Source of the DNA: Podarcis pityusensis | Lineage: Eukaryota | NCBI GenBank assembly: GCA_964106645.2 | Contig: OZ067050.1 | Direction: 5' to 3' (one strand) | DNA length: 64,000 nt | Shown: one piece after another, positions 12,849 through 59,436 of the stretch | How the letters are laid out: each line of letters opens with the position of its first letter | How positions within the stretch are numbered: position 1 is the first letter of the stretch | Made by a program: the position numbers and the translations under genes | Notes under the pieces: generated by a model | Told to the model about the DNA's origin: nothing | Seen by the model: the letters and a program-made list of their open reading frames with translations, nothing else | Database searches by the model: none

Positions 12849-14882
12849 TACATCCAACTCCCAAAATTTCTGGGTTGAAGTGTCAAGTGTTCTGCTGCCC
12901 TCTGCCTGGGAAGCAAACCCTTTTCATGCATTATTTTGGCCAAGGCAAAAATGTGGGGCCAATCACCCCACAAGTGACATCCCTATCCAAATAGGGACAG
13001 ATTGCTCCCAGTATTCAAGAAGATACTGTCCAACATCTAACCCCACTGTGTTTACAGATACGGGGATAATTCCCATGACTGGCTGATTACTAAAGGCGCT
13101 TCCAGACTGTCGCTATTTTTGGATGAGATTCAATCACATACCATAAATTCAGGACAGGAGAGGGTTGTGAAATACCAAACACAAGTCTAACATGCAGCAA
13201 CCATTGCAAGGAAGCATATACTATGCTAAAACATGGAAAGAGAGCACTACTACGAATAGGATTAATCAGGAAAACCTGGGAGCAATTGGAGAAAATAAAA
13301 TTAACCATTGCGATGCACCTCTATAAAATTATCAGAGAAGAAATGTTGAAACAGGTGCCTGCAGTAAATTGCATTGAAAAATAACTGGGCATAATAGACA
13401 CAGGGTTAAATCAAATACTGTCATTAAGAGTTTGCGTGTGGCAGGGCAAAGAAGATGGGTTTTTTAGAAGTGGTTTATGCATATTTATACATGCGCCTAT
13501 GGTGGGAAGGTTTTGTAGCTGTGTTTTGTCACATCGATAAAAGTTAAATAAATTTAAAAAATCAGGTTGATTTGGAGGCCTTGCATAACAAACCTGCTTC
13601 CCTCCCCGCCAAATTTGACTTTTAGTGGTAAAGAAATTGTTGGGGAAATGGACTGGAAATTGTGGGGGGAATTTGCTCCCAGCCTCTCTCCCAATAAATC
13701 AGAAGGAATTCTCAACAAACAGCCGGTGCGATCTAGTCTCTGTGCAAACAGCTCAGGATAAACACTCAATAAACAGACTGTCTGGAACAGGTTGAATCAT
13801 CATAACTGTGAACTTACTCATCACCTTAAGCCAGCTGTCTTCCGCCTTTGCACCTCTTACCTCAACCAGCAAAATTGGTACTCCACTTTTTAAAAAAGTA
13901 TTTATTTCCATTTTAACTGTTTTTTTCTTCTCTCCCATTCCTTCTCTGCCCACCCCCAAGTGGTGCAGTTGGTGCAACCCATCATAGAATCATAGAATCA
14001 TAGAATCATAGAATCATAGAGCTGGAAGAGACCACAAGGGCCATCGAGTCCAACCCCCTGCCAAGCAGGAAACACCATCAGAGCACTCCTGACGTATGGT
14101 TGTCAAGCCTCTGCTTAAAGACCTCCAAAGAAGGAGACTCCACCACACTCCTTGGCAGCAAATTCCATTGTTGAACAGCTCTTACTGTCAGGAAGTTCTT
14201 CCTAATGTTTAGGTGGAATCTTCTTTCTTGTAGTTTGGGTCCATTGCTCCGTGTCCGCTTCTCTGGAGCAGCAGAAAACAACCTTTCTCCCTCCTCTATG
14301 TGACATCCTTTTATATATTTGAACATGGCTATCATATCACCCCTTAACCTCCTCTTCTCCAGGCTAAACATGCCCAGCTCCCTTAGCCGTTCCTCATAAG
14401 GCATCGTTTCCAGGCCTTTGACCATTTTGGTTGCCCTACTCTGGACACGTTCCAGTTTGTCAGTGTCCTTCTTGAACTGTGGTGCCCAGAACTGGACACA
14501 GTACTCCAGGTGAGGTCTGACCAGAGCAGAATACAGTGGCACTATTACTTCCCTTGATCTAGATGCTATACTCCTATTGATGCAGCCCAGAATTGCATTG
14601 GCTTTTTTAGCTGCCTTTCTAGGTGCTCACAGACTGTTTGCTTAATGATCTGCTCCAGAATCTTCCCTGGTATTGATGTCAGACTGACGGGGCGGTAATT
14701 ATTTGGGTCCTCTCTTTTCCCCTTTTTGAGAATAGGGACAACATTTGCCCTCCTCCAGTCTGCCGGGACTTCGCCTGTTCTCCAGAAATTCTCAAAGATG
14801 ACTGCCAGTGGTTCTGAGATCACATCTGCCAGTTCTTTTAATACTCTTGGATGCAGTTCATCTGGCCCTGGAGACTTGAATA

Positions 14883-15847
14883 CAGTGGTACCCCGCAAGA
14901 CGAACGCCTCGCAAGACGGAAAACCCGCTAGACGAAAGGGTTTTCCGTTTTGGAGGCGCTTCGCAAAACGAATTTCCCTATGGGCTTGCTTCGCAAGACG
15001 ACAGCCCATAGGGAAATCTCCGGGACAGTGGGGAAGCGCAGCGCGTCTTCCCCACTGTCCTCGGACCTCCTCCCGCCGGCCGGCTTCGGAACGAATCTCC
15101 GATGCCGGGCGGGGGGGGGAACGCCTCCTCCCGCCGCCCGGCATCGGAATGAATCTCCGATGCCGGGGGGGGGGGGAACGCCTCCTCCCGCCGCCCGGCA
15201 TCGGAACGAAGCTCCGATGCCGGGCGGGGGGGGGAACGCCTCCTCCCGCCGCCCGGCATCGGAACGAAGCTCCGATGCCGGGCGGGGGGGGAACGCCTCC
15301 TCCCGCCGCCCGGCATCGGAACGAAGCTCCGATGCCGGGCGGGGGGGGGAACGCCTCCTCCCGCCGCCCGGCATCGGAACGAAGCTCCGATGCCGGGCGG
15401 GGGGGGGGACGCCTCCTCCCGCCGCCCGGCATCGGAACGAAGCTCCGATGCCGGGCGGGGGGGCAGGGACACCTTCTCCCGCCGCCCAGCTTCGGATGGC
15501 TTTCCTGAAGACTTGGGGTGGGAGGAGGGTTTTCCTTCCCACTGCCAACATTCAGAATGCTGTTCTGAATGTTGGCGGTGGGGAGGAAAAACCCTCCTCC
15601 CACGCAAGCCCCGGGAACAGAGGGAAAGCGCTGCGCGCCTTCCCCTCTGTTCCCGTACCTGTCCTGAAGGCTTGCGGTGGGGAGAAAAGCCCTTCTCCGC
15701 ACCGCCAGCCTGGCAAGCGGTTTCCCTAGGAACGCATTAATTGATTTTCAATGCATTCCTATGGGAAACCGTGCTTCGCAAGACGAAAAACTCGCAAGAA
15801 GAAAAAACTTGCGGAACGAATTAATTTCGTCTTGCGAGGCACCACTG
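14883..15847. mobile_element. pogo-like non-autonomous element with an internal palindromic 58-bp minisatellite
   Basis: TIR CAGTGGTACCCCGCAAGACGAA / TTCGTCTTGCGAGGCACCACTG, TA TSD, subterminal CGCAAGACGAA repeats; removing it restores the CR1 frame LASLDVFKSP. Confidence 0.9.
15075..15495. repeat. Tandem array of ~7 x 58-bp self-complementary GC-rich units
   Basis: Unit CCGCCCGGCATCGGA-ACGAAGC-TCCGATGCCGGGCGG-G(n)-AACGCCTCCTCCCG. Confidence 0.9.
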
Positions 15848-16403
15848 TACATCTAAACTAGCCAAGTATTCTTGTACTATCTCCTTAGTTATTCTGGGCT
15901 GTGTTTCCTTTGCTGAATCATTTGCTCCAAATTCTTCAGGTCGCGCATTGTTTTCTTTATCGGAGAAGACTGAGGCAAAGAAGGCATTGAAGAGTTCAGC
16001 CCTTTCTGTGTCCCCTGTTTGCATTTCACCATCTTCTCCTCTGAGTGACCCCACTGTTTCTTTGTTCTTCCTTTTGCTACGAACATACCCATAAAAGCCT
16101 TTTTTGTTGCTTTTAACCTCTCTAGCAAGCCTGAGTTCATTCTGTGCTTTAGCTTTTCTGACTTTGTGTCTACACGTGCTGGCTATTTGTTTGAATTCCT
16201 CTTTGGTGGTTTCCCCCCTTTTCCATTTTTTGTACACATCCTTTTTTAATCTTAACTCAGTTAAAAGTTCTTTAGATAGCCACCCTGGCTTCTTTAGGCA
16301 CCTTCCATGTTTCCGTCTCATTGGTATTGCCTGACGTTGTGCTTTTACTATCTCCCTCTTAACAAACTCCCAGCCACTTAAAGATCAAGAAACCATCCTG
16401 TTA

Positions 16404-23643: not shown

Positions 23644-25767
23644 ATGCCAGTATTCATTCTCCTGAGCCTCCTCCTCCGTGATGTTGTATCTGGTAGTCCA
23701 GGTAAGGTCACAAAAGGGGCTAGCTGTTACTGCATTTTGCATCTGGAGAATTAAAAGAAATGTTGTGATAATTTGCAAGGAGGAGGAGCAGAGAGATAGA
23801 GAGAGAGTGTGAGTGAGTGTGTGTGTGTGTGTGTGTGTGTGAGTGTGTGTGTGTGTGTGAGTGAGTGAGTGTGTGTGTGTGTGTTGGCTGCAAGGCTGGA
23901 CTAAGGCTGTGCGTATGCCTTTAAATCTCATTTGAAGCCCATTCTTTCCTTCAAAGAATTCTGGGCCCTGTAGTTTATCCCTCACAGCAATGCAATTCCA
24001 AGCAACCCTTAACAAACTACAGGACCCAGAATTCTTTGAGGCAAAGAATGGGCTTCCAAGGGATAGCATGCACACAGCTTAAAAGAAGCAACAGCCTGTG
24101 CCGCTAGGTTGGAAAAGATTCAGAAAACAGCAAGCAAATTTATCCAGGGGATGAAGTGAAAGGTTGTAGCTTCTGGGACTTTTGAGTTTAGAGAAAAGGG
24201 TTGATAATGGATTAAATCAACCTGCCTTTTAATTCGTGAACCTGTTGCTCATCCCCCTTTGTGGATCCAGCCCAGGCAAGTTCCTCGTCTTATTCCGGAG
24301 AATATGGCGGCAGCAGTGGGGAACATTTTGACCAGTCCAGGAATCAGCTGGATGGTCCCATAACAGCTCTGAGGATACAGGCAAACAACAAGTATATACT
24401 GAGGTTTGTATGTCTTTTGGGGTGCTACCTGTGTGTGGCAGATTCAGCAAGGTTAGCAGAGGGGATCTTCAGTGACTGGGGAGCCACAATGTCACTGAAA
24501 ACAGTGGCGCACATGTCTGAGTAGATAGCATGGGTAGGATCAGGGCTCACAAGTAATGCCTCATCTGTATATACAGTGGTGCCCCGCAAGACGAATGCCT
24601 CGCAAGACGGAAAACCCGCAAGACGAAAGGGTTTTCTGTTTTGGAGGCGCTTCGCAAGACGAATTTCCCTATGGGCTTGCATCGCAAGACGAAAGCCCAT
24701 AGGGAAATGCTGGCGGTCGGGAGCAAAGACTTTCGCCCACAGCCGGCCTTCAGAAGAGGACCTCTTCTGAAGGCCGGCGGGGGGCAAAAGTCTTTGCTCC
24801 CCCCCCGCCTGCCTTCCCCCCCGCCTGCCCCGGGCGATCTTAAAATGCTGGCGGGCGGGAGCGAAGCACTCGCTGCCGACCCCCAGCATTTTAAAATCTC
24901 CCCGGGACAGCAGAGAAGTCTCTGCTGTCCCGGGGAGATTTTAAAATGCTGGGGGTCGGGAGCGAAGCGTTCACTGCCGACCCCCAGCATTTTAAAATCT
25001 CCCCCTGTCCCGGGGAGATTTTAAAATGCTGGGGGTCGGGAGCGAAGCGTTCACTGCCGACCCCCAGCATTTTAAAATCTCCCCCTGTCCCGGGGAGATT
25101 TTAAAATGCTGGGGGTCGGGAGCGAAGCGTTCACTGCCGACCCCCAGCATTTAAAAATCTCCCCGGGACAGCAGAGAAGTCTCTGCTGTCCCGGGGAGAT
25201 TTTTAAATGCTGGGGGTCGGCAGCGAACGCTTCGCTCCCGACCCCCCAGCATTTTAAAACGCTGTTCCGAAGCGGGGCGGGGGGGGCGGGAACACCTGCC
25301 CCAGCCGCCCCACTTTGGAACGCTGCTCCGAAGCGGGGCGGGGGGCGGGAACACCTTCTGAAGGCGGGCGGGGGGCGAAAGTCTTTGTCCCCCCTGCCTG
25401 CCTTCCCAGGGGCTTTTAAATCGCCCCGGACAGCGGAGAAGTCCTCCGCTGTCCGGGGCGATTTTAAAATGCCGCCCGCCAGCATTTTAATATCGCCCGG
25501 ACAGCGGAGAAGTCCTCCGCTGTCCTGGGGTTTTTTAAAATGCTGGGGGTGGGAAGAAAAGCCCTTGTCCCCCCCCCCAGCCTTCAGAAGAGGTCCGGGG
25601 ACAGACTGTCCCCGGACCTGGTCTGAAGGCGGTTTCCCTAGGAACGCATTGATTGATTTTCAATGCATTCCTATGGGAAACCGTGCATCGCAAGACGAAA
25701 AACTCGCAAGACGAAGAGACTTGCGGAACGAATTAATTTCGTCTTGCGAGGCACCACTGTACAGCAA

Positions 25768-25806
<39 letters not shown>

Positions 25807-26896
25807 GCTGGATAAGGGTGGATAAACCCACATGTGGATAAACCCACAGGATATACAGCAGCTTTTGGCAAATATTTATATCTGACCCAGGCTCAGTTCT
25901 TTGGGTTGTTGGGTGGTGATAGGGCAAAGGCTGTACGGGAAGAGGAGTAGTTCTTGCCACTAGATTTGGGTTGAGCAGAGAACCCAAGCCATAAACAGCA
26001 GGAATGGGGAATTTGATCCAGCCAAGTTTTACAGGGAGGTGGGGGCTACCGACTTGTCAATCGCTTGATATCACAATGATGTCAGGGGACCTGTTTCTAC
26101 TCACCTAGAAGATCAGTTGATTATCAGGATTCTCATAACTCCCTGAAGCGCAGGGGGTACTGCATCCGGCCGGTGGGCGGGACACTTATCTCCCCCACCT
26201 CCTTGTGGGGGGCCACTGAGCTGTCAGTCACCTGACTTCAGATCACAGTGACATCAGGTGACCCATTCACCTGGTTGTCAGGATTTGCGAAGTTCCACAC
26301 ACAGACCTATGCAAGCCCCTGGCTCTCATCTAGTGGAACTGGGCCCAGAAATTCCTGTGCGATTTCCCTGCTGACTGAGAACTGATGATGTACAAATTGC
26401 CTGATATGGTGGTGAAACCTGGGTGGTAATTAAAAGTGGTTGTCCGTTGGTTTCTATCTGAGATGCAGCTGTTAAACACTGTCCCTCAGAAGGTGGCAGC
26501 CTTCACTAACCACAATCCATCCCTTGTCACTGCAGCATCCAGGTTCGCTACGGCGGCATGTGGTCCAGGATTGAAGGGAACCCCTCAGGGAGCCAATCTG
26601 TGATGCCGCTGTTTCCTGGAGAAGGCATCGTGCAAGTCATGGGCCGCTTCGGAAGCTTTGTGGAGTATATTGCCTTCCGCACCAACCTCGGCCGTGTCTT
26701 TGACTACGGGGCTGGCTCTGGTTTGGGGGTCGCCTTCGACGCTGAGCCTTTGTTCCCAAACACCATCCTGCGCTACATCAGCGGCCGCTCAGGGCCTTTG
26801 GTCAGCGCTGTCGGGTTCCACTGGGACAAAGAAGAAGGAATTGGAGGGTGGGATCAATCCACTGGCTCTCCACACACCAAGAATAACAGCCCATAG
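23644..26896 (+). CDS. ZG16-like secreted jacalin-related lectin, 183 aa, 3 coding exons
   Basis: Exons 23644-23701, 24271-24403, 26536-26896; total 552 nt. Signal peptide followed by SSSYSGEYGG...NQLDGPITALRI...IQVRYG...PGEGIVQVMG...PLFPNTILRYISGRSG...VGFHWD, closely resembling ZG16. AATAAA at 26941-26946. Ortholog versus paralog status unresolved. Confidence 0.92.
23795..23885. repeat. (GA)n/(GT)n microsatellite
   Basis: Directly visible in intron 1 of the lectin gene. Confidence 0.9.
24574..25759. mobile_element. pogo-like non-autonomous element (same TIR family as 14883) with a different internal hairpin array
   Basis: TIR CAGTGGTGCCCCGCAAGACGAA / TTCGTCTTGCGAGGCACCACTG, TA TSD; repeated internal TTTTAAAATGCTGGGGGTCGG...CCGACCCCCAGCATTTTAAAA hairpins. 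Confidence 0.9.
25768..25806. repeat. (GAT)n microsatellite
   Basis: Directly visible. Confidence 0.9.
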
Positions 26897-28329: not shown

Positions 28330-28462
28330 CTGTTCACTTTCACTTTGCAGGAAAGTTTAAAAGCTGGTTTTTGCGTCCCACCCCCTTCCCATCTCTGACA
28401 CAGCCAGGAGCAAAAGTCTCTGTGAATGAACAGACCTCGGCAGGAAGGGAAAGTGAAAGCTG
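28330..28462 (+). promoter_or_regulatory. IRF-E/ISRE-like elements upstream of the Mab-21 gene
   Basis: TTCACTTTCACTTT at 28333-28346 (reverse complement AAAGTGAAAGTGAA) and GAAAGTGAAAG at 28449-28459, 65-190 bp before the ATG. Confidence 0.6.
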
Positions 28463-28523: not shown

Positions 28524-31500
28524 ATGGCAATGAGCGGGGAGGGGGATCCTCCCGGCCAGCGAGAGGGGATCCTGCAGCAGTTCTACGCCGACAGGGTCTT
28601 CCTGTGCGGGGACAAAGGCTGGAGGGTCGGGAAGAATTTCTTCGTGGTAAAAAGCACGGTGGAGAAGATGGTAAAATGGGCCTATGAATCCAGCACCGGG
28701 CTCTACCCCAACGACCCCATCCCGGTCGGCAGCCACAGGGAAGGGCTGCACCTTCAAGTGGAGGGGAGTTCCAACGGTTTCGACTTCCTCATCCCCGCGA
28801 GGTATAACCCCAAGCTGGCGCTCGTAAGTGGGGGCATCGCCAAGGAGCCTGGCAGCTATGAAAAGAAGCTGCCCACCTACATTTTCCGCGAGCAAGGGCT
28901 GCCCGTGTTTCGCTGGGGCACCAAAGTCCTTGTGGACCTCGAGGCTTTCGGGGAGATGTACGTGGAAGTCCACTGCCACCGGCAAGCGGAGCGACTGGCG
29001 GACGAGGACGACGAGGAAGACCTGGATTTCTTAGATGAGTGCAAGGTAGATTTCGACAGAGCGGCATCATCACCATGGTTATTTTGATGATGATGATTAA
29101 GTAGTTTATATACTACTTCTACTTCAAAAAAGACTTTAAAGCAGTTTAGGACATTAGAAAAGTATCACACATAAGTACAAAAAAAAAGTGAACTAAAAAT
29201 AAGCATTTTGATGTGGTACAAAACAATTAAGTAAAATCCTCATGAAAATCAATATGAACTAGAACTACTATCATACATTATCATTAACTTGGTGGAACTT
29301 CTGAGACCTGAATGTTCAGTGCACATTTTAAGTCAGTTTTCTGATTTGATTGTTTAACTTGATTTATTGGTATTGTGCCTTTTATACTGTGAAGCCACCT
29401 AGAGACGGGCAGAACAATCCAAGCTATGGGAAGCTGGTAAAATTTCCACTGTCTTAACTGATGCCATCTTAAGTTAGGCTGGTGTAGTCTGAGGTTGTGC
29501 TTTATGCTGGCGTGAGCACAGCCAGGGAGTGTGGGTTTTACACTGGTGTAGCCCCCAGCTCAGCTAAGACCCGCTGAATCCACACCTCATCCTCCTGGTG
29601 GATCTGGGGTTTCCATTCTCCAACTCAAGAGGATGCAAAATCCAGTGACCCGCTTTGTTTTCTCTTTGTCCAGGAGAGCCTCAGCCACCACCACCTGGAC
29701 CCTGTCCAAATCTTGGAGGACTTTCACCGACATATAGAAATCGCTTTGGACCCAGGTACAGCCATGGCAGCGCAGGTGGTGTGCTAACATTTCCTTTGGT
29801 CCGAGGGTTGCTTGAGAGAGGGGCAAATTGAACTCCCAAACCTGTAGTTAGTTAGTTAGTTAGTTAGTTAGTCACACACACACACACACACCCTCCCCCC
29901 GTTATAGCATGCTATTCTGTAAACCTCATAATCCGATTCCTCAGATACCTGGACTTACAGGTGCTTTTCCTCTAAGGAGACCTGGCAGCCATCCTAAAGA
30001 AATTCAGGTTGCCGCCTTTGTTCTGAACACGTACCCTATATTTATGCAACAGGCTTAATATCATATCACCACACTGAGATAAGCTGCACCTGTTATAATG
30101 AATTTCCACTTGTCATGTAATTAAAAGCAGAGCAATCCTTTTTAGGAAACAATGATTGAGTAGGGGTTTGGGAGCCTGAATGTCAGGCCATTCGCAATTC
30201 TCCATTAACTTATTTTCTCGAACTTTTCTTTCCTGCCTTCCCAGAGTGCACCCATCCCCGGCAAAATGGTAAGTCCAAAAACATGTAGAAATTATTTTCC
30301 CATTGGAGAAGCCATTTGCAAGGGGGGCTGGATTTGGCCTACGGTTGTTTATTTCCAAATATATAATTGAACTTAGCAGCATTCCTTGAATTTCCCCCTT
30401 GACCATTAGATCCTGTTTTCCGGCAAAAACTCTTCCGTTCCCGTGTACCCAAGATAGACAACTGGATGAGACGTGAGTCTATTTTTGAGACGTATGTTTA
30501 TTGCCGATTCCCTCAAATGTAAAAACATCAGAGTGAGTTCTGTCCTTGCCAACACCTTCCTTCAATAATTGACCGGTCAGATATGAATATATTTTAAAAT
30601 TCCATTGCAAGAGCTCTGTGGACAGAATATGACCTCTTCTGGAGTGGAGGCAGGTAACCAGATCGCAGATCTGCCACCTATCCTTCTGTATAAGGGACAG
30701 ACTTTATACTTAAATAAAAATATTTCTGATCACCTAGCCTTTTAGATTCATGGGAGAGTAACAGGACTGCCTTGCTATTATTTATGTTTGCTTGTGTTTC
30801 TATTACTGTTGTAATGCCATGACTGGTTTACCATTAAGATTTATAGGCTGCACACTGCTGTAGGTATTCCCAAAACCATCAAGAAAGGCACTGAAGAAAT
30901 GAAAAATGCAATAACTTTATTGTTCCTTCCCCTTGATTCCTGGGGGCAATCATGCTTTGTCTGTGCCCTATGCAGAGAACATCACACTGGAGGCCCTGAA
31001 TTTGGAGAGTCCTGCCATCCAGCTGGTTTTCCTTGAAGGGACGGAAACTGTCCCAGTGAAGCTGGTGCCTGCCATCCAGGGAGCCTTCAAGCTCTCCAAC
31101 CAGTGGCTGAGAGAAGACCTGGCCCACCTTTCCGAATGGTGGGATGGGGACCTGGCCAACGAAAAGAAAAGCTTTCTCCGCAAAGCAGCCGTCGTTCAGG
31201 AAGTTGGACCAGAGCTGATAGCCAAGGGAGGATTTTGGAGGTAAAAAAAAGTAAACAAACTTAGCAGCCGAGAAGGAGCAAAGGAACAGTTACCCTCTAG
31301 TGGGAAAGCAGAGTTTGGCATGAATTCAGAAAAGGGGTTTCCCCCCGCAAAAGGCCTCTTGTCTTAAGGCAAGATATGTTAAGCTTCCACTGAAATATCA
31401 AACCTTTCTTTTTAATATAAACCTTTCTTTTTAATACCATCTTATTTCTGTCTCCTGCAGTAACAATAGGAGCTAAGAGGGCTATTAAGAGTTCATCCAA

Positions 31501-32440
31501 CTAAGGAACTGTTTGCTTTCCCATAAACACGGTGTTCTAATGGAGCCATTCTCTCTCTGGGCCCAGACTCTCTTTCAGCCATGCCGAGACTGTGATTCTT
31601 GAGGACGTTGACGCTGATGGCGGGCAGAGGGCGGCAGCTTTGAGACTGCTTAAGTTTGTCAACGTGACAAAATGGACACCAGAGTACGGCAAAATCTTGA
31701 CTTCCTACCATCTCAAGGTGAACCTCCCTATTAAATTCTGCACTGACTGGTGAGATAAAATAACCGAAATGCAATCAGTGCTATCTATTGCCAGGCCAGT
31801 GCTTACCATCCCCTCAGGGGCCTCTTTCACACACTTGGAACCTGATATCAAGGCCCTTATATTTGCTTCTAGTCAAAATGGAGGAAAATGTAGCCAAGGA
31901 GTCAGCAATATGATGCCCTCCACATTCCTTTTTCCCAATCTCCTGAAGCACACCAGAACTGCCCATACTGTTGAACCTCTAAGAGCCACAAAGACCTAAC
32001 ATTTCCCTCCTCTCTTCCTCTTGCAGACCGTTTTGCTGTGGTGCTGTGAAATCTACCCGCAGAAGGAACAGTGGGAGACTCTACTGTCCTGCCTGGAAGC
32101 CCTCCTGAGGCTCCTACGCCATACCCTTGCCAAGAGAAACCTCCCACACTACTTCCTGCAGTCCGTCAACCTCTTCAGCAGGCGCTACAAATCCAGCAGC
32201 TCCACCTATGGCCCCTTGGCCTTGGAGGTCCTGTGCCGTGAGTTCGAAGCAATGCTGGCTGACCCCATGGGATACCTTCTGCCAGATCCTGAACGGCAGG
32301 ACCACTGCGCCAGCAGAGAGTTTGAGGAGAAGATGGCGGACCTCCGGGAGTTTAAAGAAAGTCACCGGGAAGATCTGAAGGAGCTGAAGAGAATGCAGGA
32401 TGAGCATATGTATGAGGAGGTGGAAATATCTGAAGCGTAA
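28524..32440 (+). CDS. Uncharacterised Mab-21/cGAS-like receptor-family protein (C-lobe MAB21L3-like), ~506 aa, 7 coding exons
   Basis: Kozak CCACCATGG. Exons 28524-29045, 29674-29755, 30245-30268, 30410-30472, 30976-31240, 31567-31717, 32027-32440; total 1521 nt in frame, all GT-AG. Motifs GSHREGL...GFDFLIP, SPAIQL, VKLVPAI, WRLSFSHAE, DADGG, LTSYHLKTVLLW, LPHYFLQSVNLF. The two short phase-1 exons are less certain. Confidence 0.9.
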
Positions 32441-33368
32441 AGGCCAAGTCCTGTGTGAAGGACTAGAAATCCAGAAAAGCGTTGTTCCACGCAGCATAGA
32501 ACTGGCCATTCTGCTATAGCTTTCCCACAATACCAGATTCCAGACCTCATGACCACAGAGGTAAAAAACTGAATAGCATTTGGGCAAAGTCAGACGAAAG
32601 ATCACAGAAGGGTGCCATACAGGGAGGACATCTGAACCGCTCCTTGACATTTTTGCCCACCTGCTCCCATCAGCTCCATATGAGTCATTGCGGTGTGATG
32701 GCTTGCCAGGATGAGGAACCTATAGCCTTCCATATGCTGTGGGACTAAAACTTCCAGCACTGCCAATGGTCAGGGATGATGGGAGTTGTAGTCCACCTGC
32801 CTGGAGGGCCCTTGAATCCCTGTCCCCAGGCTTGAGTGCTGGACTGGAGAGACCCAAGTTCAAGTTCTGCCACAAAGCTGAACATTGTGTCAGCCATCGC
32901 CTCTTGGATTCACCCACCTTACACAAGATTTTTGAGAGAAGAAGGGAACTCTGTATGCTTCCTCAAATGAAGGACAGGACAAAGACATAGCAACAAACAT
33001 TCCGAGGGCATCCATATTTCAGTCTTTAAAAAATTGTTTTAATGCATTTAACTCGAAATAGATTTAACAGCTTCTTGCCTGTGATGTAAGGTTTATCCTG
33101 ACTGTGGAATTGGGGGTTGCTAGTTACAATAAACACAGTTCCCAATTCCTTTCATTTTTTACCACAACTTTAAAACCCATGAAGTTCATGCCCAAGCAGG
33201 TCCAGGGGTTTCTTTTTCCTTCGTGAAGAGCCTCCTTTTCCCAACTGACGGTCCAGCTAGCTGTGGCTCAGGCATCCCTGAACGTAGCAGCCTGTCAAGT
33301 GGGGCTGCCTGTCCTGCCCAGGCACTCCTTGAACAGCACCAGTTTATGGAAACGGAATCGTCCGAGCC

Positions 33369-36300
33369 TTAAGAGAAGGTGAGGGAAAAGGCCCGGTAAC
33401 CAAAGTTGGTGAAGACGTCGATGCGGTGGCTGCTTCCGGCAGCTGTCAGCACCTGATGGCGAAGAGGAAGGGAAGATGAGAGGGAAGAGGTTTATCAGGT
33501 ATGGGGCGGCGGAAGGCCCACCCACTGCCCCACCCGCTCTGCTTCTAACCTTGCCCACCCCGTCTTTCTTGCTTTGCTCTCTACCACCACCAGTCACGGA
33601 AACAAAACCATTGTTCTGTCCAGCAGAAAACAGCAAGTACTCAAGCCCAGGGATGAGGAACCTCAGGGCCAGGGACCACATCCAGTCCTCCAGGTCTCTG
33701 ATCCTTGGGATTCTCCCTGGGCCACATTCCTTCTCCAGCCACACACCTCCTTCCCAGGCCAGGCCCTCAGTGGGTCCTGCTTTGCACCCTTCCCTGAGTG
33801 ATTTGTTTTATTTTATTTTATTGCCTGGCTGGGAATTCTGACAAAGCCTCGTTTGCCTGGAGGGGAGTGTGAGTGCGTGTAGGAATTAGCCTAGGGTACT
33901 AAGGTAAGGTTTACATTCCTTGCCCCCACCCCAACTTTTTGTCTCTAGTCCTGCCCCTGCATATGACCCTCAGAATGTTGCTTAGAAGGGACCCCTGGAT
34001 TGCAAAAGGTTCCCACCCCAGTCCTAATAAAAGAACATCTTCTCCCACATGCCTCTGCCTACCCCCAGTCAGATCTCTGACGGAGGCCGAAGAACGCAGA
34101 ACTGGCAAGTATGCAGGGCAAGGCCTTCTGGGTTGTGGCACCCAGACTGGAGAACTCCCTCTCTTATGGAGCACATATGGCTCCCTTTCTGCTGCTATTG
34201 CAACACCTCCGTTCAACCTCTTAGGTTCAATAGGCCTATGGCCCACCCCCTTATTATTGTCTGGTTCTCCAGTGCGGTTTTGGTTTCTGTGCCACTTCAG
34301 GTTTGGGGGTTTGTTTTTTAACATACTTTTCCCAAGATAATTTGCCGTTTACTCATAGCTGTGTTTTAAATTTGGTTTGTCAGCTGCCTTGAGAGATTTC
34401 CACTTTATAGGGATATAGTTGTTTTCATTTGCCGGGGGCGAGGGTCCCACAAACTCGCCATTTGGTGGTCCAGACCTCTGGGTTTCTACAAACTGAAGCC
34501 CAAATTCACTACTTCTGCAGGTCCAACCCCAAGTGACAACCCACCTCTCATTCACCAAGCCCCCCTTGCTCCTTGGAAGCTTGGCACATTCTTATTTCAG
34601 CCCCCTCCCCCACGTCCACAGTCCTACTTGCCAAAGCTAAGCCCTGCCCCTTCCAAGCAGAATTCCAGCCGCCTCCCTCTGCAGGCCAGACACCCTCCTA
34701 CCTCCCTCCTGCCGCCCAGGAGCTTACCTTGTGCTCTGGCGAGTGTTCATTGATGGAAAGAGAGTGGATGCAACGTGGGATGCAAGGGATTTGAGCCTTC
34801 ACTTCCCCACTGATCTGTAAATGGTTAATGGTGGGGCTGTGGCCAGCCGAGAGAATCTGCGGAAGACAGATCGTCAGGGCGGGGAAAGAGGGTGCTGAGT
34901 GAAAGGGCGGGTTGAATAGCTGTCAACCTTCCCTTTTTTTGCAGGAAATTCCCTTATTCCAGAGCCATTTCCCGCTGCTTCCCGCTGCTATCCCGGATTG
35001 TTAGATATCCCGTAGACTGTCCCCGGGACAGCTGAGGCTGCTGGTCCCTTATTTTCGAGGATGCTGATCCCTTATTTTCAAATCTGAAAGTTGACAGCTA
35101 TGGCGGGTGGCAATGAAACCATTTTTATGAAGAATAAAAAATTTGGCGCAAAAGGGAAGAGCAAAGGAAGGGGAAATAAGACTGGTTGGATGAAGGAATA
35201 ACAACAAAGGAGCAGGGGGAAGAAATACAGGAATCAAGGGAATGAGGAAGCCAGTGAGATGGGAGGCTATGTGGCCCTCAACCCCCGGGGGGGATGACTC
35301 ACCAAGTCCTGGTAGAACATGACTTGTTGCTGACACTGGGGCACGGGGAATATCGTGGTAGGTGTGACGGACCGCAGGTGCCACAGAGTGAGCGCTGGGC
35401 CTCCACCACACACCTGTGGAAGGAGAAACAGGAAAAGGGTTGGAGAGATCTTAAACCAGGAAGTCAGGGCGCTCCATACTAGGGCCAGGGCCTGGTCTAA
35501 GGTGAGTCACAACAGCAGCCACCATGCAAACCTAAGGGAAACATTAAGAAATGGGTCCCTCAAATTCACGTTAAAGGGACATCCCAGATCTGAAAAAGTG
35601 GAAGACTGCCTTAGGGAACCCACAACCTGCCGATGACAAAAGCTCTCTGCAAGAGCCCTTTTGCTTACCCGGTGCACCAAACACTTGTCCATTGCAAATG
35701 TCAGCAGCCCCCCTTGCTTCCAAGGCCAGTTTCAGAAAATAGGGGCAGAACAGGGAGCTCCAAAGAAAGGGGAAGCCAACGTCTCTGGACGTCCCATGCG
35801 ACATCCGAGAACAGCAAGGCTCAGTGAACAACCTCCTCCTTCCCTCCCAGACTGCTGCACTCCAGCTCAATACATTTTGGGATATTTAAGCTGTTCTCTT
35901 TCTGCAGCCAAGAGTCAATGAACTCACCATCCAGTCGGACTCGGTTGCCAGGCAACGGATCCACTTCCCGTTCTGTGGCCTGTTGCATTCCTAAGGGAGT
36001 TGAGGGGAGCATTAGGGGAAGGTGGCCGAAGGAAGCAATGGTTAAGTGGTGAAGCTGGTTATCGAAAATGAGTAAGGGCTCCATTTCCTCAAAGGTTTTT
36101 CTTCAATAAAATATGAGATCGCAAGTGTGAGGTTGTCTCCCGTTAATATAGGTTCCTAGTTTTTATTAGGGGTTCTTGTTTTGAGGAGTTGCAAACACTT
36201 TGATAATAACAGCAGCTTAGTTTGCATATTTTTCTCTACTTTGTAAATTATTTTTAAAATTTCTGGATAGATGGAGAATGGAAGAATGGGGAGGGATAGG

Positions 36301-39300
36301 AAGGCACTGTGTTCCCTGGGGCAGAGGGAAATGGGATAAAACTGCAATACCTCATAAGGTTATCTAAAAGGGTTTAATCCTGGATGGTGATTTGGAAATG
36401 GGCTATTAATCTTTCTCATTGCTGCTAAGATCAGTATAGTGGTCAATTAGACCACTATTTATCTGAGTGGTTTCATAAAACGTGGAATATAATAGCTCCA
36501 TTATCTAAACTGACATATTACAGGAGAATGCATAAATAACAACAGTCAACCTAATCTATGGAACAACAGTTTGTTTATGATGTTTTGGAATGACAAACCT
36601 CAGGAAAATATCCAGTCATATACTTAATTTTGCTTTATTATAACTAATCTTTTATTGTTTGTTTTCCTTTATGATTATTGTTTGATGCCTTCTTACATTA
36701 AAAATAAAGTTGTTGATGATGATGATTACATTACCTCATATTTATGTACTTCAATTGATTGAACCTGACCTCCAGTACGTAAATCTGCAAAGAGAGAGAA
36801 ATAAAGTCCATGGTTTGTCTAGTCAACTGTAGCTCAGTGGCAGATCATCTGTTTGCATTCAGAAAGACCCTGGTTCAATCCTCAGCATCTCTACTAAGGG
36901 GTGGGAGGGACCCCACCTGAAACCCCTGCCATTAACCATAGACAACATGTTGCTAGATGGACCACAGGCCTCAGTATAGGCAGCTTACTATGTTGCATAT
37001 ACACCATCCCAGTCCTAGAAAACAAGCCAAAGGGGGTGTCAGCAACTGATCATCTAAAGAGATTGGAAGAAAATGGAGCAGTGGGATCCCTGTGGCATTG
37101 GCTCGTCCCCAAACATTCTGAAGATATTCCCTGAATCACCTTTAAGTAAGTGACATCCGCCCTGCTTTTCAAGAAACTGCTAAGAGCAAACAAATATGGA
37201 ATCTAAGATAAAATCCAAGAGTTAAAACAAACCTTACGACCATTAGCCATATAACAGAGAACAGAAGTTTAAAAGGCACAGATTGATACCCAAAGATGGC
37301 TTACATCCACAGCATACATTTAAAGCAGGATGATACCACTTTTAACAGTCACGGAGAATCCTGCGAACTGTGGTTTGCTCAGAGTGCTGACTTCACATAG
37401 CTACAGTTTCCTGCACTGTTGACCAACTACAGTTCACAGGGTTTTTTATATCTGTTAAAGGTATCATAGCGCTTTAAATGTATGGTGTGGATGTTGCCCG
37501 AGTCATATTCAAATCAGCGAACATAAGTAACCAAGACGCCTGTTTCAGGACTGCGGGGTCACCACCACTGAGAAGGCCCTACCCTGACAGGGTTCAGATT
37601 TGGCTTCCTTCAGAGATGGGACATGCAGATGGGATCTGCCCAACTGATTTTAAAGCACGGGGCAGGGATTATATGGGGAGACGATCTCTCAGAGAAACAG
37701 CAGGCGGCAAGGAGGCTGCAGATCCTCACCCCAAAGGCGCACGGTGCCATCCTCACTCCCTGACAGGCACTCTCTGAGCTGGTCTCGAAGGGCCAGGCAG
37801 TGGATATAATCGGTGTGGCCTTGATATTCATGCTGTGACAGAGAGAGACGAAACAGAGTATGACTTGCGGTGGATGGAGGTAGGACACATTCTGGAGGCT
37901 GCAGAGATATGCTACGGAATAACTGAGAAATTATATTATGATACTCTATTGCTGTTGCAGAACAACACAGAATCCTGAAAAGCTATTTTTATTAAGTTTT
38001 CAATAACCATAAACAAGGGGGAAAGCCTTGGAGTTTGGAAATTGAGAATCTGACAGATTAAGAGGATTTATTTCCAGTTTATAATAACAATTTTGGGATA
38101 CTCTAATGCAGAGAAGCCCCTGTAGGAGATGAGAAGGAGTTGCCTTAAATAAACCTCCTCTCTCCCTGCATTTCATCAGCCCCATGATGCTAGAGGCACG
38201 ACTCACCATGAAGGCGCCAGATTCCAGATCCATCATGTGAATGGAACAGTCTCCCCCAGCCATTAGAAGACTATTATCCTGAAGGAGGAAGGGGGAGAAG
38301 CAGCAAGAATGAGGCCGAGGCAGATGAGTGAACCATGCCAAACCCTCCCCATATTGCGCTGCGCCTGTACCTTGAGGTTCAGCTGAAGGCTGTTGATTTC
38401 TGGCACCTCCAAGCTGCTCCTGAGCAGAAAAGCAAAGAGAGAATTTTTGCCATCTGTACATGCATAAAGAGGAAGAAAAGATGGCAATGGTGAAAGGGGG
38501 AAATCAAAGTTATACCCATAAGGCGGCCTCCTGCTCCAGGCTTCTTTGCAACCCTGCGGCAGAAGGCAGAAGAAGGTTAAGAGGAACACAGTCAAAAGGA
38601 AGTCGGGAGAAACATGGGAGGGGAACCGATGAGCCAGCCGCCCTTACCTTCTTCACAATCTCACTCCAGTTCCAGGCCTTGACTTCCCCATTGCCAGCAC
38701 TGAGCAGCTGCCGGTCTGTGGAAACCAGGGCATAGACGGGACCTTCGTGAGCTGTGGGAAGAAGAAGCACCTGAAATGGATGGATTTTGGCATGGCAGTG
38801 GTGAAGTGCATTCTGGGAAATCCCCAGCTTGCCACCCTGAAGTTCCGGAGTTTAACCTTGCCAGGAATGCATTTTATTTCCATCTCATTTGCAGAGGGCT
38901 TGCAAGCCCGTGGCCAGATTCAAGGGGGCCTTGGGGGCAAGGACAGTCCTGGGAGAGCCCCCTCCCTTGGTTAGCTTACCAATCAGCAGGGGCAGGACTG
39001 TGAGAAGGAGAAGCCACTGTGACCACTCGGCCCACTGCTCCCCTCAGTGAAGGGCCCTTAAAATTAAAGGAGTCGTGTTAGGTATGTCAACACGGCAAAT
39101 CATCACACAGGCACCCAGCTAAGGTGGGGAGAGGGTCTCCAAATTGGCACTTTAGAGAGATGGCAGGGGCAGGCGGTGGCACTGAATAATGGCACTGATG
39201 CACAGGCCCCTCCAGACTGAGGTGTTGGGTTTTTTCCAGGTGTATCCTGCAATGCATCATTGGCACAATAATAGCATGTTGGTGGTGGATTTATACGATC

Positions 39301-40484
39301 ATCCACACATCATTCTGCTTTATTAGTTCTTCTGTGATGCCTCCCCAATGATATTGTATAAAAGGCCTCAGCCCAGAATACCTGAAGGAGCGTCTCCACC
39401 CCCATCGTTCAGCCTGGACACTGAGGTCCAGCTCCGAGGGCCTTCTGGCAGTTCCCTCCCTGCGAGAAGTGAGGTTACAGGGAACCAGGCAGAGGGCCTT
39501 CTTGGTAATGGCGCCTGCCCTGTGGAATGTCCTCCCTTCAGATGTCAAGGAAATAAACTATCTGACTTTTAGAAAAAATCTGAAGGCAGCCTTGTTTAGG
39601 AAAAATTTTAATGTTTGATGGTTTATTGTGTTTTTTAATATTCTGTTGGAAGCCACCCAGAGTGGCTGGGGAAACCTAGCCAGATGGGTGGGGTATAAAT
39701 AATAAATTATTATTATTATTGAAAGCAGGACTGCGAATAACTGTCCTGATACCATCATAAGCACAAATAATCATGAATGTACAATAAATACGACACATGG
39801 AGAGGCCTCATGTAAGGGCCCAAAGGCTGGGGGCTTTTTTTGGGTGGAAGGTGGAGCCACCCAGCCCAGTGCTTCTCATCTCAGGGCCAGGCCCTTAATT
39901 TATTTATTTATTTATTAAACGATGCCAGCATTAGCCACACAGGCTCTCCTGGAGCCCAGCCAATGCTGCATGCTGACGCTGGGCTTGGGGATCTGCTTTA
40001 TGGGAACTCCTGGCATTGCCACAAACGGCCAACCGTAATAAACAAGCAGGTTGGCATGGGAATGGATGCTCAATGCATCTTGGGAGTTCCTGGACTCCTT
40101 GCAGTTGTTGTTATTTGTTTATATCCCATTAGCCTTCCCGAAAGAGCCCAGGGCAGCAACAACAGGCAACATAACGATAAAAGCGTCTTAAAAACAATTC
40201 CAGTAGAGGCTGTATTTTTCACCTACCTACAAAGGACACCACTGGCTTCTTGCTCTCCTCCTTAGCCTCTGAACTCAGTGCTGCAGAAAGGCTGGAGAGG
40301 AAGAAACACAGAGGTGTGAGGAAATGCAGAGATAATTCCTCCCTCCCTCAAAAGAGGCACCCAATTACCTGAAGATGGCAATCTCTCCATAGTTGTTCCC
40401 GGCTGCCAAGTACTTGCCACATGGCGAGACGCTCTGGGAGTAGACAGTCATGTGCAAGAGTTCCAGGGATCGCTGAATATCCAT
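33369..40484 (-). CDS. THOC6: THO complex subunit 6 (WD40 repeat protein)
   Basis: Exons (-): 40484-40369, 40291-40227, 38751-38648, 38553-38516, 38419-38371, 38278-38207, 37832-37730, 36784-36735, 35990-35928, 35413-35303, 34856-34728, 33452-33369; total 984 nt. [72 protein letters not shown] short upstream coding exon may exist but was not confidently located. Confidence 0.96.
34915..35102. mobile_element. hAT-type MITE
   Basis: TIR ATAGCTGTCAAC...GTTGACAGCTATG; near-perfect 8-bp TSD GCGGGTTG/GCGGGTGG. Confidence 0.75.
36828..36992 (+). mobile_element. tRNA-Ala-like SINE
   Basis: TGTAGCTCAGTGG...TTTGCA...CTGGTTCAATCC...GCATCTC head and CTAGATGGACC...GGCAGCTT tail; a similar degenerate head lies at ~48945-49010. 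Confidence 0.6.
39360..39720 (+). mobile_element. L2 LINE 3' fragment
   Basis: Encodes YLKERL...RAF...APALWN.LP.DVK and ends AGCCACCCAGAGTGGCTGGGGAAACC...TATAAATAATAAATTATTATT. Confidence 0.75.
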
Positions 40485-41559
40485 CTGGCAAGAGGAACAA
40501 GCAGGAGAAGTCAAGGAAGCAAGTGCTGCCTGGATGGATGCTGGTTTTTGCTTTCCTAAGAAATACTGTTTTATTTGCCCAGGCATGTCCCACCCCAAGC
40601 CCTGATTGCACTACAGTATAAGCAGATTCCATCCTTGGCAAAAGAAAATCCCACCTATGTAGTTGATTTACCTGCTGCGGAGCTTGACCAAGCTCAATTT
40701 TTTGTAAAGCCCAATTCTGCTAATTCCTGCAATATACCAAAGTGTAGATCTAAGCAGCCTGGCCTTGGATGTCAATAGGTAAGATGGGAGCAAGATCTCC
40801 CCAGTATGGCACACTGGTCTCACCAGCATCCCAGTGCAGTACATGGAACCACAGAACAGGCTGCCATGCTACATGCTCCCCATGTCCAATGAGCCTCACA
40901 CAGGGGTGCGACAAATGATCCCAAAGCATGTGGGGTTTCCAGCAAGGCAAAATAGGGTACATCAGGAGTAGGGAGCCTGTGGCTCACCAGATATAATTTT
41001 TTTTTTTGGGGGGGGGATTCCAGCTCCCATCAGCTCCAGTGAGTATGGCCAATGATCAGAGGTGATGGGAGTTGTAGTCCAGAAATATCAGCACGGCCAC
41101 CAGTTCCCTACCCCCACTACACGCTGCAAATCATATGGTTCCCTCGACAAAAGGAGATGTAAACACTGCATCTAATGTGAGTTTTTAAAATGCCCCATGG
41201 GTCAACATAACGCTTTTGTTTTGCTACTGCTTGTTTAATTTGGTCACGATTTATATTTTGATGGTTAGCTGCCTTGGTTTTGAGTTTTAATTTTGGCTGC
41301 GATACTTATACTGTATGTTTTTTGTATCAGGCTACCTTGAGTTCGATTTTATAAGAAAAGCAGCTTAACAGAAATGCAGAGTTCCCTTTAAAATAAAATT
41401 AAAAAAAAAAAACTTGATAATGCTGAGCGCGGAGCAAAAAGAGGAGCCGCATTGCAGCAAACGTTGGTCCAGGCAAAGCGCACACTCTATGCACACTGCC
41501 CGAGGAGTAAGCCCATTGAACACAGTGGGACTTACTTCTGAGTAAGCACGCAAACGACC

Positions 41560-43491: not shown

Positions 43492-45846
43492 ATGGATCAG
43501 ACAACTGGCCAGCAATCGCCAACAATTATTCCATCCAGCCCATCCACGTGCTGCTCCTTCTTGGCTGGGAGCAGGGGTTGGAGCCACACCATGCCCTCCA
43601 GCAGGCAGCGGCACACAGCACGCAGAATGCCATGGATAAGGCAAAGCCAGGGCTTGGTGAACTTCAGTAAAATACAGCAGTCCCGGTAAGCATGTGCACA
43701 ATGAGGCTTTTTGCTTGGGTGAAGAGGAAAGGATACATTTTGAGGATGGGCTGAGGGAGAGAAAAGTGGATTTTGATAGCACCCACCTCTCTGGCATTTA
43801 TTCACAGGCAAAAAGGTGACCGACCTGCTGGAAGCTTTAAAAAACATGCCAGAGAAGGAAAATGCAGTCATTTTGTTGGGCTTTTTATTTTGCAGCTTAG
43901 TTCTGAAGGAAAGAGGCAAAAGGGCGGACAGTGGGCTACAGTCATAAACTTTCAGGGAGCTTAATTGATTACAGGACTTTATATATTCTGAAGGCACTTT
44001 ACAATACAGTTCACACACAATTTAGGTAAAATAACTGTAACAAGACAGTGAAACTCAGCAGTGTAAAACATTTTAAATGTATTTACTTCCCAGCAAAATA
44101 ACAAAGTAGGCACTAGGCAAGCCTCTCTGGGGGAGGTATTTCACTCCTGCTGTCTCATACCTTGTCTCAGATGGCAGGTACACTTGTAGAAGATTATTGG
44201 CTAAATATCTTAAGGTATAAATAGAAGTACGCAGTCCTTCAAGCATTCTGGTTCTGTAAAGGGCCTTAAAGCTGTAGCTAGGTGATCTTGCGCCCCTGGC
44301 AGAACCGTCCAGATTGCGCCCCCTAGCCATGGACAAATTAGCTCCTCTTTCCGCCTCTCCTCCAACCCCGCCCCCAACCAATTCAATTCACACTCCTATT
44401 TAAAACCTTTTATTTATAGACCTATTTATGTACATATTTTTAGCCAATTTTGCTCCCCTCCTTGCCTGCGCCCCTGGCTGGGCCCCACCTCACCACTCCC
44501 TAGCTATGGCCCTGGGTGGGTTTGGGTGGGGAGAAGAGAAAAAACCTAATTCAGTGCTGTGAGGAAGGAAGGAGGGGTCCTGCAAATCCATGGACTTTGG
44601 GGTCTGCAAAGAGGAAGAAGCACAGCTTTTATAATTATGGTAAAAGAGTAGGCCAGTGGGAGAAGAGCAACTAGTGTGGGGGGATCTTTGGGTCTCGAGT
44701 ACAACTGTAGCTTTTTGTTTTAGGTGCCGGTCAACATCCTTCGCTTTCAAACGCCATCTGGAGCATAGAGATCAGTAAGTGTGACATAAGATGAGGAGTT
44801 ATGGCTGGTGCATGAAGCGATTGGGGCTAGAAACTTCCATATTCATAATCCACTTTCTTCTTCCATATACAGGTTACAATTGCATCATGTTTTTTTCTTA
44901 AAAGCTTTTTTTTTTTTTTTTTTGCTGATTAAATATATTCCATTGTAGTTTTCTGAGAACAATGAATAAACTATTGACCATGCAATTTTCATTTAAGTAA
45001 GTGTGTGCTTTTTGTATCCGACACTAAAAATGCCAAATGAACTTTTAATGTGCTACAGTGCATGATGGGCCATGCTGAAGGGCAGAGTGGGGAAAGTGAG
45101 CTTGGCATGAATTGGTACAGGACAGGATTGGTGTCACTGGACCCTGGACTCCTTGCCATTGCTCTCTGTGCCCCAACAGGGAACCCAGTTCCAAACACTT
45201 CCTCTCAGAGGACAAGATGGCTGCCCGCTTCAACTCTCTTAGCCTGGACAATGACCATGTCTACAGCTCCAATGGTTTCCCTCTCTACGATGAAGATCCC
45301 AAGTGGCAGGAGGCATATGCACGCTTGAAAGAACTGCAGCAGAGGTACTGGGGACCACTGCTTTGTGAGGGGGGCAGTCAGAGAAGCAGAATAACAAGGC
45401 TTCATTGTGTGAGATTTTCTCTCTCTTAGGCTGTCCCAAGATGGAGCAAGTGAAGAAGCTAGTTCAGATGAGGATGAGCACAACAGTGTGCTTGTGGATG
45501 GGGAATTCATTATGGCAGATTGCCCCATACTGGCACATCCTTCCTTCCTACAAGAGCCCGTTGGAGGAGTCAGCCTTGTGCCTGAAGAGGTATTTCTTTC
45601 TCTGTAAGTATAGCACAAGACTTGGGAAGAAAAGAGGAACACTGGAAAGCAAAATCATTTGCATCAGTAACTAGCATCCTCCCTCATTCTTACAGGAATC
45701 CTTGTACAGAAGTGGTCCTTTGGAGCCCTCCTAGTAACTCAGGCTTTCACAGTATCCGGACATTGATGGCTATCCCATCTGCCCTCAGCTCTCCTGCACA
45801 GCCTCAGCAAGCAGCAGCAACAATACAAGAGGAAATGGAAATATGA
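43492..45846 (+). CDS. HCFC1R1: Host cell factor C1 regulator 1 (HPIP), ~244 aa
   Basis: Exons 43492-43685, 44724-44774, 45180-45344, 45430-45603, 45696-45846; total 735 nt. KRHLE..QEPSSKHFLSEDKMAARFNSLSLDNDHVY contains the leucine-rich export signal and the DHxY HCF-binding motif; PCTEVVLW; terminal EEMEI. Head-to-head with THOC6 as in mammals. Start codon uncertain. Confidence 0.88.

Positions 45847-47713: not shown

Positions 47714-59436
<11,723 letters not shown>

What the first reader, a model, noticed from the sequence alone, without database searches (positions are those of the whole stretch)
28524..32440. Intact, uncharacterised cGAS-like (Mab-21) gene with a degraded catalytic triad: candidate pseudo-cGLR
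Seen: a 7-exon ~506-aa ORF with a strong Kozak context and the Mab-21/cGAS structural motifs (GS at 28728, SPAIQL, WRLSFSHAE, SYHLK, LPHYF..NLF). Known: active cGAS/cGLR nucleotidyltransferases need hG[SG]...[DE]h[DE] plus a third acidic residue (human cGAS E225/D227/D319). Here the positions read N-G-F-D (GGT 28776-28778) and V-K-L (AAG 31059-31061), i.e. G/D/K. The cGAS zinc thumb after WRLSFSH is replaced by DADGG, as in MAB21L3. From recall, no Mab-21 gene lies between TNFRSF12A and THOC6/HCFC1R1 in human. Inference: a non-mammalian, catalytically dead cGLR acting as a nucleotide or nucleic-acid-binding scaffold or decoy in innate immunity.
Basis: partly seen in the sequence, partly recalled or inferred. 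Interest (0 to 1): 0.85.

Follow-up and report, generated by a model that had tools for sequence, protein, structure and literature searches.

The report
Reptile interferon-linked disabled cGAS-like protein
Lizards and snakes keep, under selection and behind a conserved interferon-type promoter element, a relative of the immune sensor cGAS that has lost its catalytic residues, while the turtle copies of this apparently undescribed gene family mostly keep them, which offers a natural enzyme and non-enzyme pair to test.

Summary
Observation confirmed: a 7-exon, 506-codon gene of a lacertid lizard. All six splice joints appear in probable RNA contigs of a relative. The model of the Lacerta ortholog has the cGAS fold (Z 25); the triad reads G85/D87/K259.

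Searches found relatives only in squamates and turtles, beside THOC6 in both. None of 20 squamates has an acidic third residue (17 K, 2 N, 1 R), whereas 13 of 15 turtle sequences keep D/D/D. dN/dS is 0.22-0.30. The nucleotide-pocket residues are conserved. An IRF/ISRE-type element lies 56-75 bases upstream in 7 of 7 squamate loci (lead from this scan's note s1-722650, same window; not found on other DNA).

Best reading: an interferon-inducible pseudo-cGLR acting by nucleotide or protein binding. Its pI of about 5.4 argues against nucleic-acid binding. The missing zinc thumb is the cGLR default, not a MAB21L3 mark. Inactivity, induction and ligand are inferred, not tested. No tree with vertebrate paralogs could be built. 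No paper on the family was found. Dead Mab-21 proteins are a known kind; this family and its live-to-dead switch look new.

The parts
28333..28348 (-). Distal IRF-type element (tandem GAAAGT repeats on the minus strand); lacertids only
   Evidence: present in the window and L. agilis, not found in other squamates
28449..28462 (+). Proximal IRF/ISRE-type element, about 75 bases before the ATG
   Evidence: at -56 to -75 in 7 of 7 squamate loci; a similar site at -87 in the turtle Natator
28524..29045 (+). Exon 1 (aa 1-174): spine helix, GS (28728-28733), G85 (28776-28778), D87 (28782-28784), inserted beta segment, acidic loop
29674..29755 (+). Exon 2
30245..30268 (+). Exon 3 (24 nt)
30410..30472 (+). 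Exon 4 (63 nt)
   Evidence: joints and piece; orthologous exon in 8 loci
30976..31240 (+). Exon 5: SPAIQL strand, K259 (31059-31061) at the third catalytic position, family-specific LSDWW insert
31567..31717 (+). Exon 6: LSFS, short DADGG linker in place of a zinc thumb, K348 (31652-31654), SYHLK (31703-31717)
32027..32440 (+). Exon 7: Mab-21_C helical lobe, extra C-terminal helices, conserved acidic YEEV tail (32411-32422), stop

Best explanation
A functional, probably interferon/IRF-inducible gene for a cGAS-fold pseudoenzyme. Shown: intact spliced gene, cGAS fold in a model of the ortholog, purifying selection, conserved IRF element, third catalytic acid replaced in all squamates sampled while most turtle relatives keep it. 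Inferred: (1) the ancestral reptile gene was a triad-complete cGLR; (2) the squamate ancestor replaced the third Asp by Lys, which should end two-metal catalysis, after which the first Asp drifted repeatedly to Gly or Asn; (3) the conserved pocket (G69, S70, D87, R319, K348, Y366, K369, plus K259, which could stand in for a metal charge) still binds a nucleotide or cyclic dinucleotide; (4) when induced by infection the protein acts as a ligand-tuned adaptor or buffer in antiviral signalling, through protein contacts (inserts, acidic YEEV tail) and not through nucleic-acid sensing.
For: Triad table: 0 of 20 squamates acidic at site 3; site 1 is D 11, G 7, N 2; 13 of 15 turtle sequences D/D/D. 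Loss of any one triad carboxylate inactivates cGAS (PMC4897736). Pocket residues K348, Y366, K369 and R319 are invariant in the 20 squamates. dN/dS 0.22-0.30 against six squamates. IRF element in 8 of 9 loci against 0.0007 expected per 60-nt window. Fold matches cGAS, Z 25.1, rmsd 3.2 over 317 residues. pI 5.1-5.8.
Against: No activity, binding or induction data. The IRF pattern was chosen after seeing the sites and the loci are related, so the chance figure is only a guide. The element is missing upstream of the annotated ATG in Dermochelys and in the turtle B genes. Conserved pocket residues may be kept for folding. MAB21L1 binds CTP outside its active site (PMC4897736). No positive-selection test was run.
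Confidence: 0.5

Rival explanations
1. A non-immune Mab-21 pseudoenzyme: a developmental regulator or adaptor like MAB21L3, MAB21L1/2, TMEM102 or MiD49/51, possibly a diverged duplicate of one of them.
For: The nearest predicted structure in the ESM Atlas is a MAB21L3 cluster (TM 0.55/0.73), then MiD51 and MiD49. Feature search lists TMEM102, MB21D2 and ITPRIP clusters. Some databases auto-name members 'mab-21-like 3'.
Against: Conserved IRF element; three to four times faster evolution than THOC6; tandem duplication in turtles; solved cGAS and cGLR1 structures score above MAB21L1, MiD49 and MB21D2.
Confidence: 0.2
2. An OASL-like decoy that binds dsRNA or dsDNA and boosts or dampens RIG-I or cGAS signalling.
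For: Same logic as human OASL, a dead NTase that binds dsRNA (PMC4446440). The spine helix has net charge +3 in lacertids.
Against: Whole protein net charge about -20, pI about 5.4; spine charge varies from -4 to +4 across squamates; nucleic-acid-sensing cGLRs have pI >8.5 (PMC9980059). Surface electrostatics could not be computed.
Confidence: 0.13
3. Still an enzyme, with changed chemistry (one metal held by D87 with lysine assistance, or a hydrolase of nucleotide messengers).
For: D87 is invariant in all 35 family sequences; K259 is kept in 17 of 20 squamates; 11 of 20 keep two of the three acids.
Against: Site 1 changed to Gly or Asn in at least five lineages and site 3 varies among K, N and R, which looks like released constraint.
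Confidence: 0.13
4. A decaying gene or annotation artefact.
For: Degenerate active site; several database models are split or truncated.
Against: Open frame in about 20 squamates, spliced contigs, dN/dS far below 1.
Confidence: 0.02

Closest known systems
cGAS and cGAS-like receptors (mouse cGAS 7uyz; Cv-cGLR1 8gjw; Sp-cGLR1 8gjy)
   Same: Whole two-lobed fold (Z 25.1, 22.1, 21.9), GS motif, WRxSFS, SYHLK, phosphate-binding lysines.
   Different: About 20% identity; triad G/D/K; 171 residues between sites 2 and 3 (motif allows 50-90); no zinc thumb; acidic; extra C-terminal helices.
MAB21L1/L2 and MAB21L3
   Same: Fold (5eog Z 19.4; MAB21L3 cluster TM 0.55/0.73); third triad residue altered (Q169 in MAB21L1); short linker in place of the zinc thumb.
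   Different: About 140 residues longer; fast-evolving; never retrieved in four homolog searches; Dermochelys has a separate MAB21L3 protein (XP_038228246.1); IRF element.
MiD49/MiD51
   Same: Dead cGAS-fold proteins (4woy Z 19.8); MiD51 uses bound ADP as cofactor (reference title), a model for step 3 of the mechanism.
   Different: The N-terminal mitochondrial anchor of MiD proteins (own knowledge) has no counterpart here; profile E-value only 2e-5.
Human OASL
   Same: Interferon-linked, catalytically dead NTase-fold protein with active relatives in other lineages.
   Different: OAS family, not Mab-21; binds dsRNA and carries ubiquitin-like domains; this protein is acidic and has none.
Shrimp LvMab21-1/2/3 (PMC12928593)
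   Same: Mab-21 proteins acting in antiviral signalling by protein contact (IKKepsilon) without nucleic-acid binding or cGAMP synthesis.
   Different: Invertebrate; no orthology shown; their triad state was not checked here.

Membership tests
Mab-21/cGAS structural family | Mab-21 NTase and Mab-21_C domains | tested here: met
   Exon 7 hits PF20266, E 3e-12; ortholog P0001 hits PF03281 (27.7 bits, cut-off 24.1) and PF20266
Mab-21/cGAS structural family | Caged two-lobe cGAS fold | tested here: met
   Model of P0001, pLDDT 80, pTM 0.82; Z 25.1 to cGAS
Active cGLR (criteria of PMC9980059) | GS motif | tested here: met
   G69-S70, preceded by V where the motif has Q/T
Active cGLR (criteria of PMC9980059) | Three acidic residues [DE]h[DE]...h[DE]h | tested here: not met
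   G85/D87/K259 here; 0 of 20 squamates complete; 13 of 15 turtle sequences complete
Active cGLR (criteria of PMC9980059) | 50-90 residues between sites 2 and 3 | tested here: not met
   171 here, 137-183 across the family
Active cGLR (criteria of PMC9980059) | Ligand-activated nucleotide messenger synthesis | not testable with these tools
   needs biochemistry
Nucleic-acid-sensing cGLR | Basic protein, pI above 8.5 | tested here: not met
   pI 5.1-5.8 in 19 of 20 squamates
Vertebrate cGAS | Zinc thumb | tested here: not met
   gap against mouse cGAS after LSFS
MAB21L3 or another human member (1:1 ortholog) | Groups with it in a tree | not testable with these tools
   no vertebrate paralog was returned with a usable id
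MAB21L3 or another human member (1:1 ortholog) | Retrieved as a close homolog | tested here: not met
   four searches gave only squamate and turtle members plus weak outgroups; Dermochelys holds a distinct MAB21L3
Interferon-stimulated gene | Conserved ISRE/IRF element near the start | tested here: met
Interferon-stimulated gene | Induction by interferon or virus | not testable with these tools
   only unlabelled contig runs were available

The most novel reading that the evidence does not exclude
Reptiles have a second, interferon-inducible cGLR branch beside cGAS. The triad-complete turtle members make a nucleotide messenger on sensing a non-nucleic-acid ligand through their large inserts, and the squamate ortholog became a metal-free receptor or sink for such messengers by an Asp-to-Lys switch.
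Probability: 0.2. Interest if true: 0.85.

Novelty: new variant of a known kind. Interest (0 to 1): 0.62.

Why it matters
Vertebrate cGLRs with complete active sites were listed as cGAS, MB21D2 and MAB21L1/2 (PMC9980059). This family adds turtle proteins with a complete triad that I could not find in the held part of that survey's table, probably because their inserts break its spacing rule (inference). It also gives a dated, lineage-wide switch from putative enzyme to pseudoenzyme with selection kept, so the question of what dead cGAS-fold proteins do in immunity can be tested on orthologs. It bears on the poorly known reptile interferon response.

Tried and rejected
The joined-exon search was left out. 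The window was searched exon by exon, and the database protein P0001 (L. agilis, 88-98% identical per exon) stood in for full-length searches, fold and tree. A first 6-exon model (486 codons) was corrected. Exon 1 alone gave no Pfam or PDB hit. A tree with cGAS, MAB21L1-4, MB21D2, TMEM102 and ITPRIP was not built: no such protein came back with an id, and typing sequences is barred. The careful tree did not finish, so the quick tree is quoted. The model of turtle paralog P0021 failed (pLDDT 38) and was not searched. Viral structures gave one weak hit at 9% identity. Paper searches for six gene ids gave nothing; other paper searches found no description of the family.

Full report
Source and gene. 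The window is from a lacertid lizard: the best full-length matches to the ortholog are Lacerta agilis, Zootoca vivipara and Podarcis muralis proteins, all named 'uncharacterized'. Reading the DNA gave six exons with GT..AG introns and fitting phases. Probable RNA contigs of a related species added a 63-nt exon at 30410-30472 and showed all six joints, one contig running from exon 1 to exon 7. The runs are guessed to be RNA and come from another species, so expression in this species is inferred.

Fold and active site. Exon 7 matches Mab-21_C, and P0001 matches both Mab-21 domains. Its AlphaFold model (pLDDT 80, pTM 0.82) aligns with mouse cGAS at Z 25.1 over residues 16-455. Among 48,161 representative chains the order is Cv-cGLR1 22.1, Sp-cGLR1 21.9, cGAS 21.5, MiD49 19.8, MAB21L1 19.4, MB21D2 17.7. 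The ESM Atlas quick search ranks a MAB21L3 cluster first, so the nearest named relative is not settled. Sequence alignments to mouse cGAS place G85, D87 and K259 on the three catalytic acids. In cGAS, alanine at any one of them abolishes activity (PMC4897736). The zinc thumb is absent, but a similar short linker is in the two closest triad-intact outgroup proteins, and non-human homologs in PMC12928593 lack the zinc ribbon too, so this is not a MAB21L3 trait.

Family and range. One unindexed search with exon 1 and three indexed searches found about 20 squamate orthologs (55-93% identical to each other) and two turtle groups: A (38-49% to squamates) and B (28-34%). No bird, crocodilian, mammal, amphibian or fish protein appeared. 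The indexed searches score only 8000 candidates and exon 1 is divergent, so absence is not proven. The quick tree gives squamates (100), turtle A (98) and turtle B (100) as groups, with squamates and turtle A as sisters at 90. The order jacalin-domain gene, this gene, THOC6-like WD40 gene on the minus strand holds in python, gecko, Lacerta, Anolis and Hemicordylus. In the turtle Pelodiscus two family genes lie next to the same WD40 gene, and Malaclemys has tandem copies. The exon 6 boundaries are the same in turtles. Dermochelys has its own, different MAB21L3 protein, which argues against 1:1 orthology.

The switch. Site 3 is K in 17, N in 2 and R in 1 of 20 squamates, never acidic. Site 1 is D in 11, G in 7 and N in 2, scattered over the tree. 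Site 2 is always D. Thirteen of 15 turtle sequences have D/D/D, 11 of them with the GS serine too; both Pelusios domains have lost sites 1 and 3. A triad-complete group A member exists as intron-free contigs in three public runs. The simplest reading is a complete site in the ancestor, loss of site 3 in the squamate ancestor and later drift at site 1. The window's glycine is therefore recent (Zootoca still has D); the lysine is the old change.

Selection. Exon-by-exon dN/dS against six squamates is 0.22-0.30, against 0.03-0.10 for THOC6. The gene is constrained but evolves faster than its neighbour. The segment 309-380, which carries R319, K348, Y366 and K369, is the most conserved part. By alignment these match cGAS nucleotide-contacting residues (own knowledge of cGAS).

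Promoter. Following this scan's note s1-722650 I checked the IRF-type sites. The proximal one (28449-28462) recurs at -56 to -75 in all seven squamate loci, in a region that is otherwise about 41% alike, and a similar site lies at -87 in Natator. The background is 0.0007 per 60-nt window, but the pattern was chosen after seeing the sites and the loci are related. The distal site is lacertid only. Dermochelys and the turtle B genes show none near their annotated start. This suggests, and does not show, interferon induction.

Mechanism. The protein is acidic (pI 5.1-5.8 in 19 of 20 squamates), unlike nucleic-acid-sensing cGLRs (pI above 8.5, PMC9980059). Squamates also carry an acidic loop at 140-180 (net -7 to -14, against +1 to -5 in turtles) and a conserved acidic tyrosine tail, mostly YEEV, which resembles a kinase/SH2 docking motif (own knowledge; it may instead be a packed strand). 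I favour an inducible, catalytically dead protein that holds a nucleotide in its pocket and acts through partners, as MiD51 does with ADP or shrimp Mab21 proteins do with IKKepsilon (0.5). Rivals: non-immune adaptor (0.2), OASL-like nucleic-acid decoy (0.13), altered enzyme (0.13), decaying gene (0.02).

Novelty. Dead cGAS-fold proteins are known (MAB21L, MiD49/51, OASL). I found no paper on this family. Neither the family's LSDWW motif nor two turtle accessions occur in the held, truncated part of the 3,020-cGLR table. The 137-183 residues between sites 2 and 3 fall outside that survey's 50-90 rule, which may be why. Verdict: a real gene, a new variant of a known kind, interest 0.62. It fails membership of the active cGLRs, and its turtle relatives are the best candidates for new active ones.

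Noticed in passing
window 24258-26896 (+): Jacalin-domain (ZG16-like) gene directly upstream; the same neighbour in python, gecko, Lacerta, Anolis and Hemicordylus.
   Followed up: partly
L002 10001-22250, L006 418-18039, proteins P0005/P0019: Turtles carry tandem copies. The Pelusios two-domain models (A then B) may be fused annotations of adjacent genes, and both domains have lost triad sites 1 and 3 independently of squamates.
   Followed up: partly
proteins P0053, P0054: Two turtle B paralogs keep D/D/D but have C or G in place of the GS serine.
   Followed up: no
window 32411-32422: Conserved acidic tyrosine motif at the C-terminus; Y498 and E502 are invariant in 20 squamates.
   Followed up: partly
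window 33370-40505 (-), 45119-45830 (+), 48443-48808 (-), 4496-4594 (+): Neighbours: THOC6-like WD40 gene, HCFC1R1 (HPIP domain), a Rab-family GTPase exon, TNFRSF12A.
   Followed up: partly
window 15066-15496 and 24925-25164: GC-rich tandem arrays with 58-bp and 80-bp units; the first sits among CR1-like retroelement fragments (14078-16321).
   Followed up: no
window 32750-32800: High-copy repeat just past the 3' end, resembling a Sauria SINE (own recall); very deep in all runs laid.
   Followed up: no
window 31717-32031: One run of the related species shows four other letters at the start of exon 7; probably allelic, not a different splice site.
   Followed up: no
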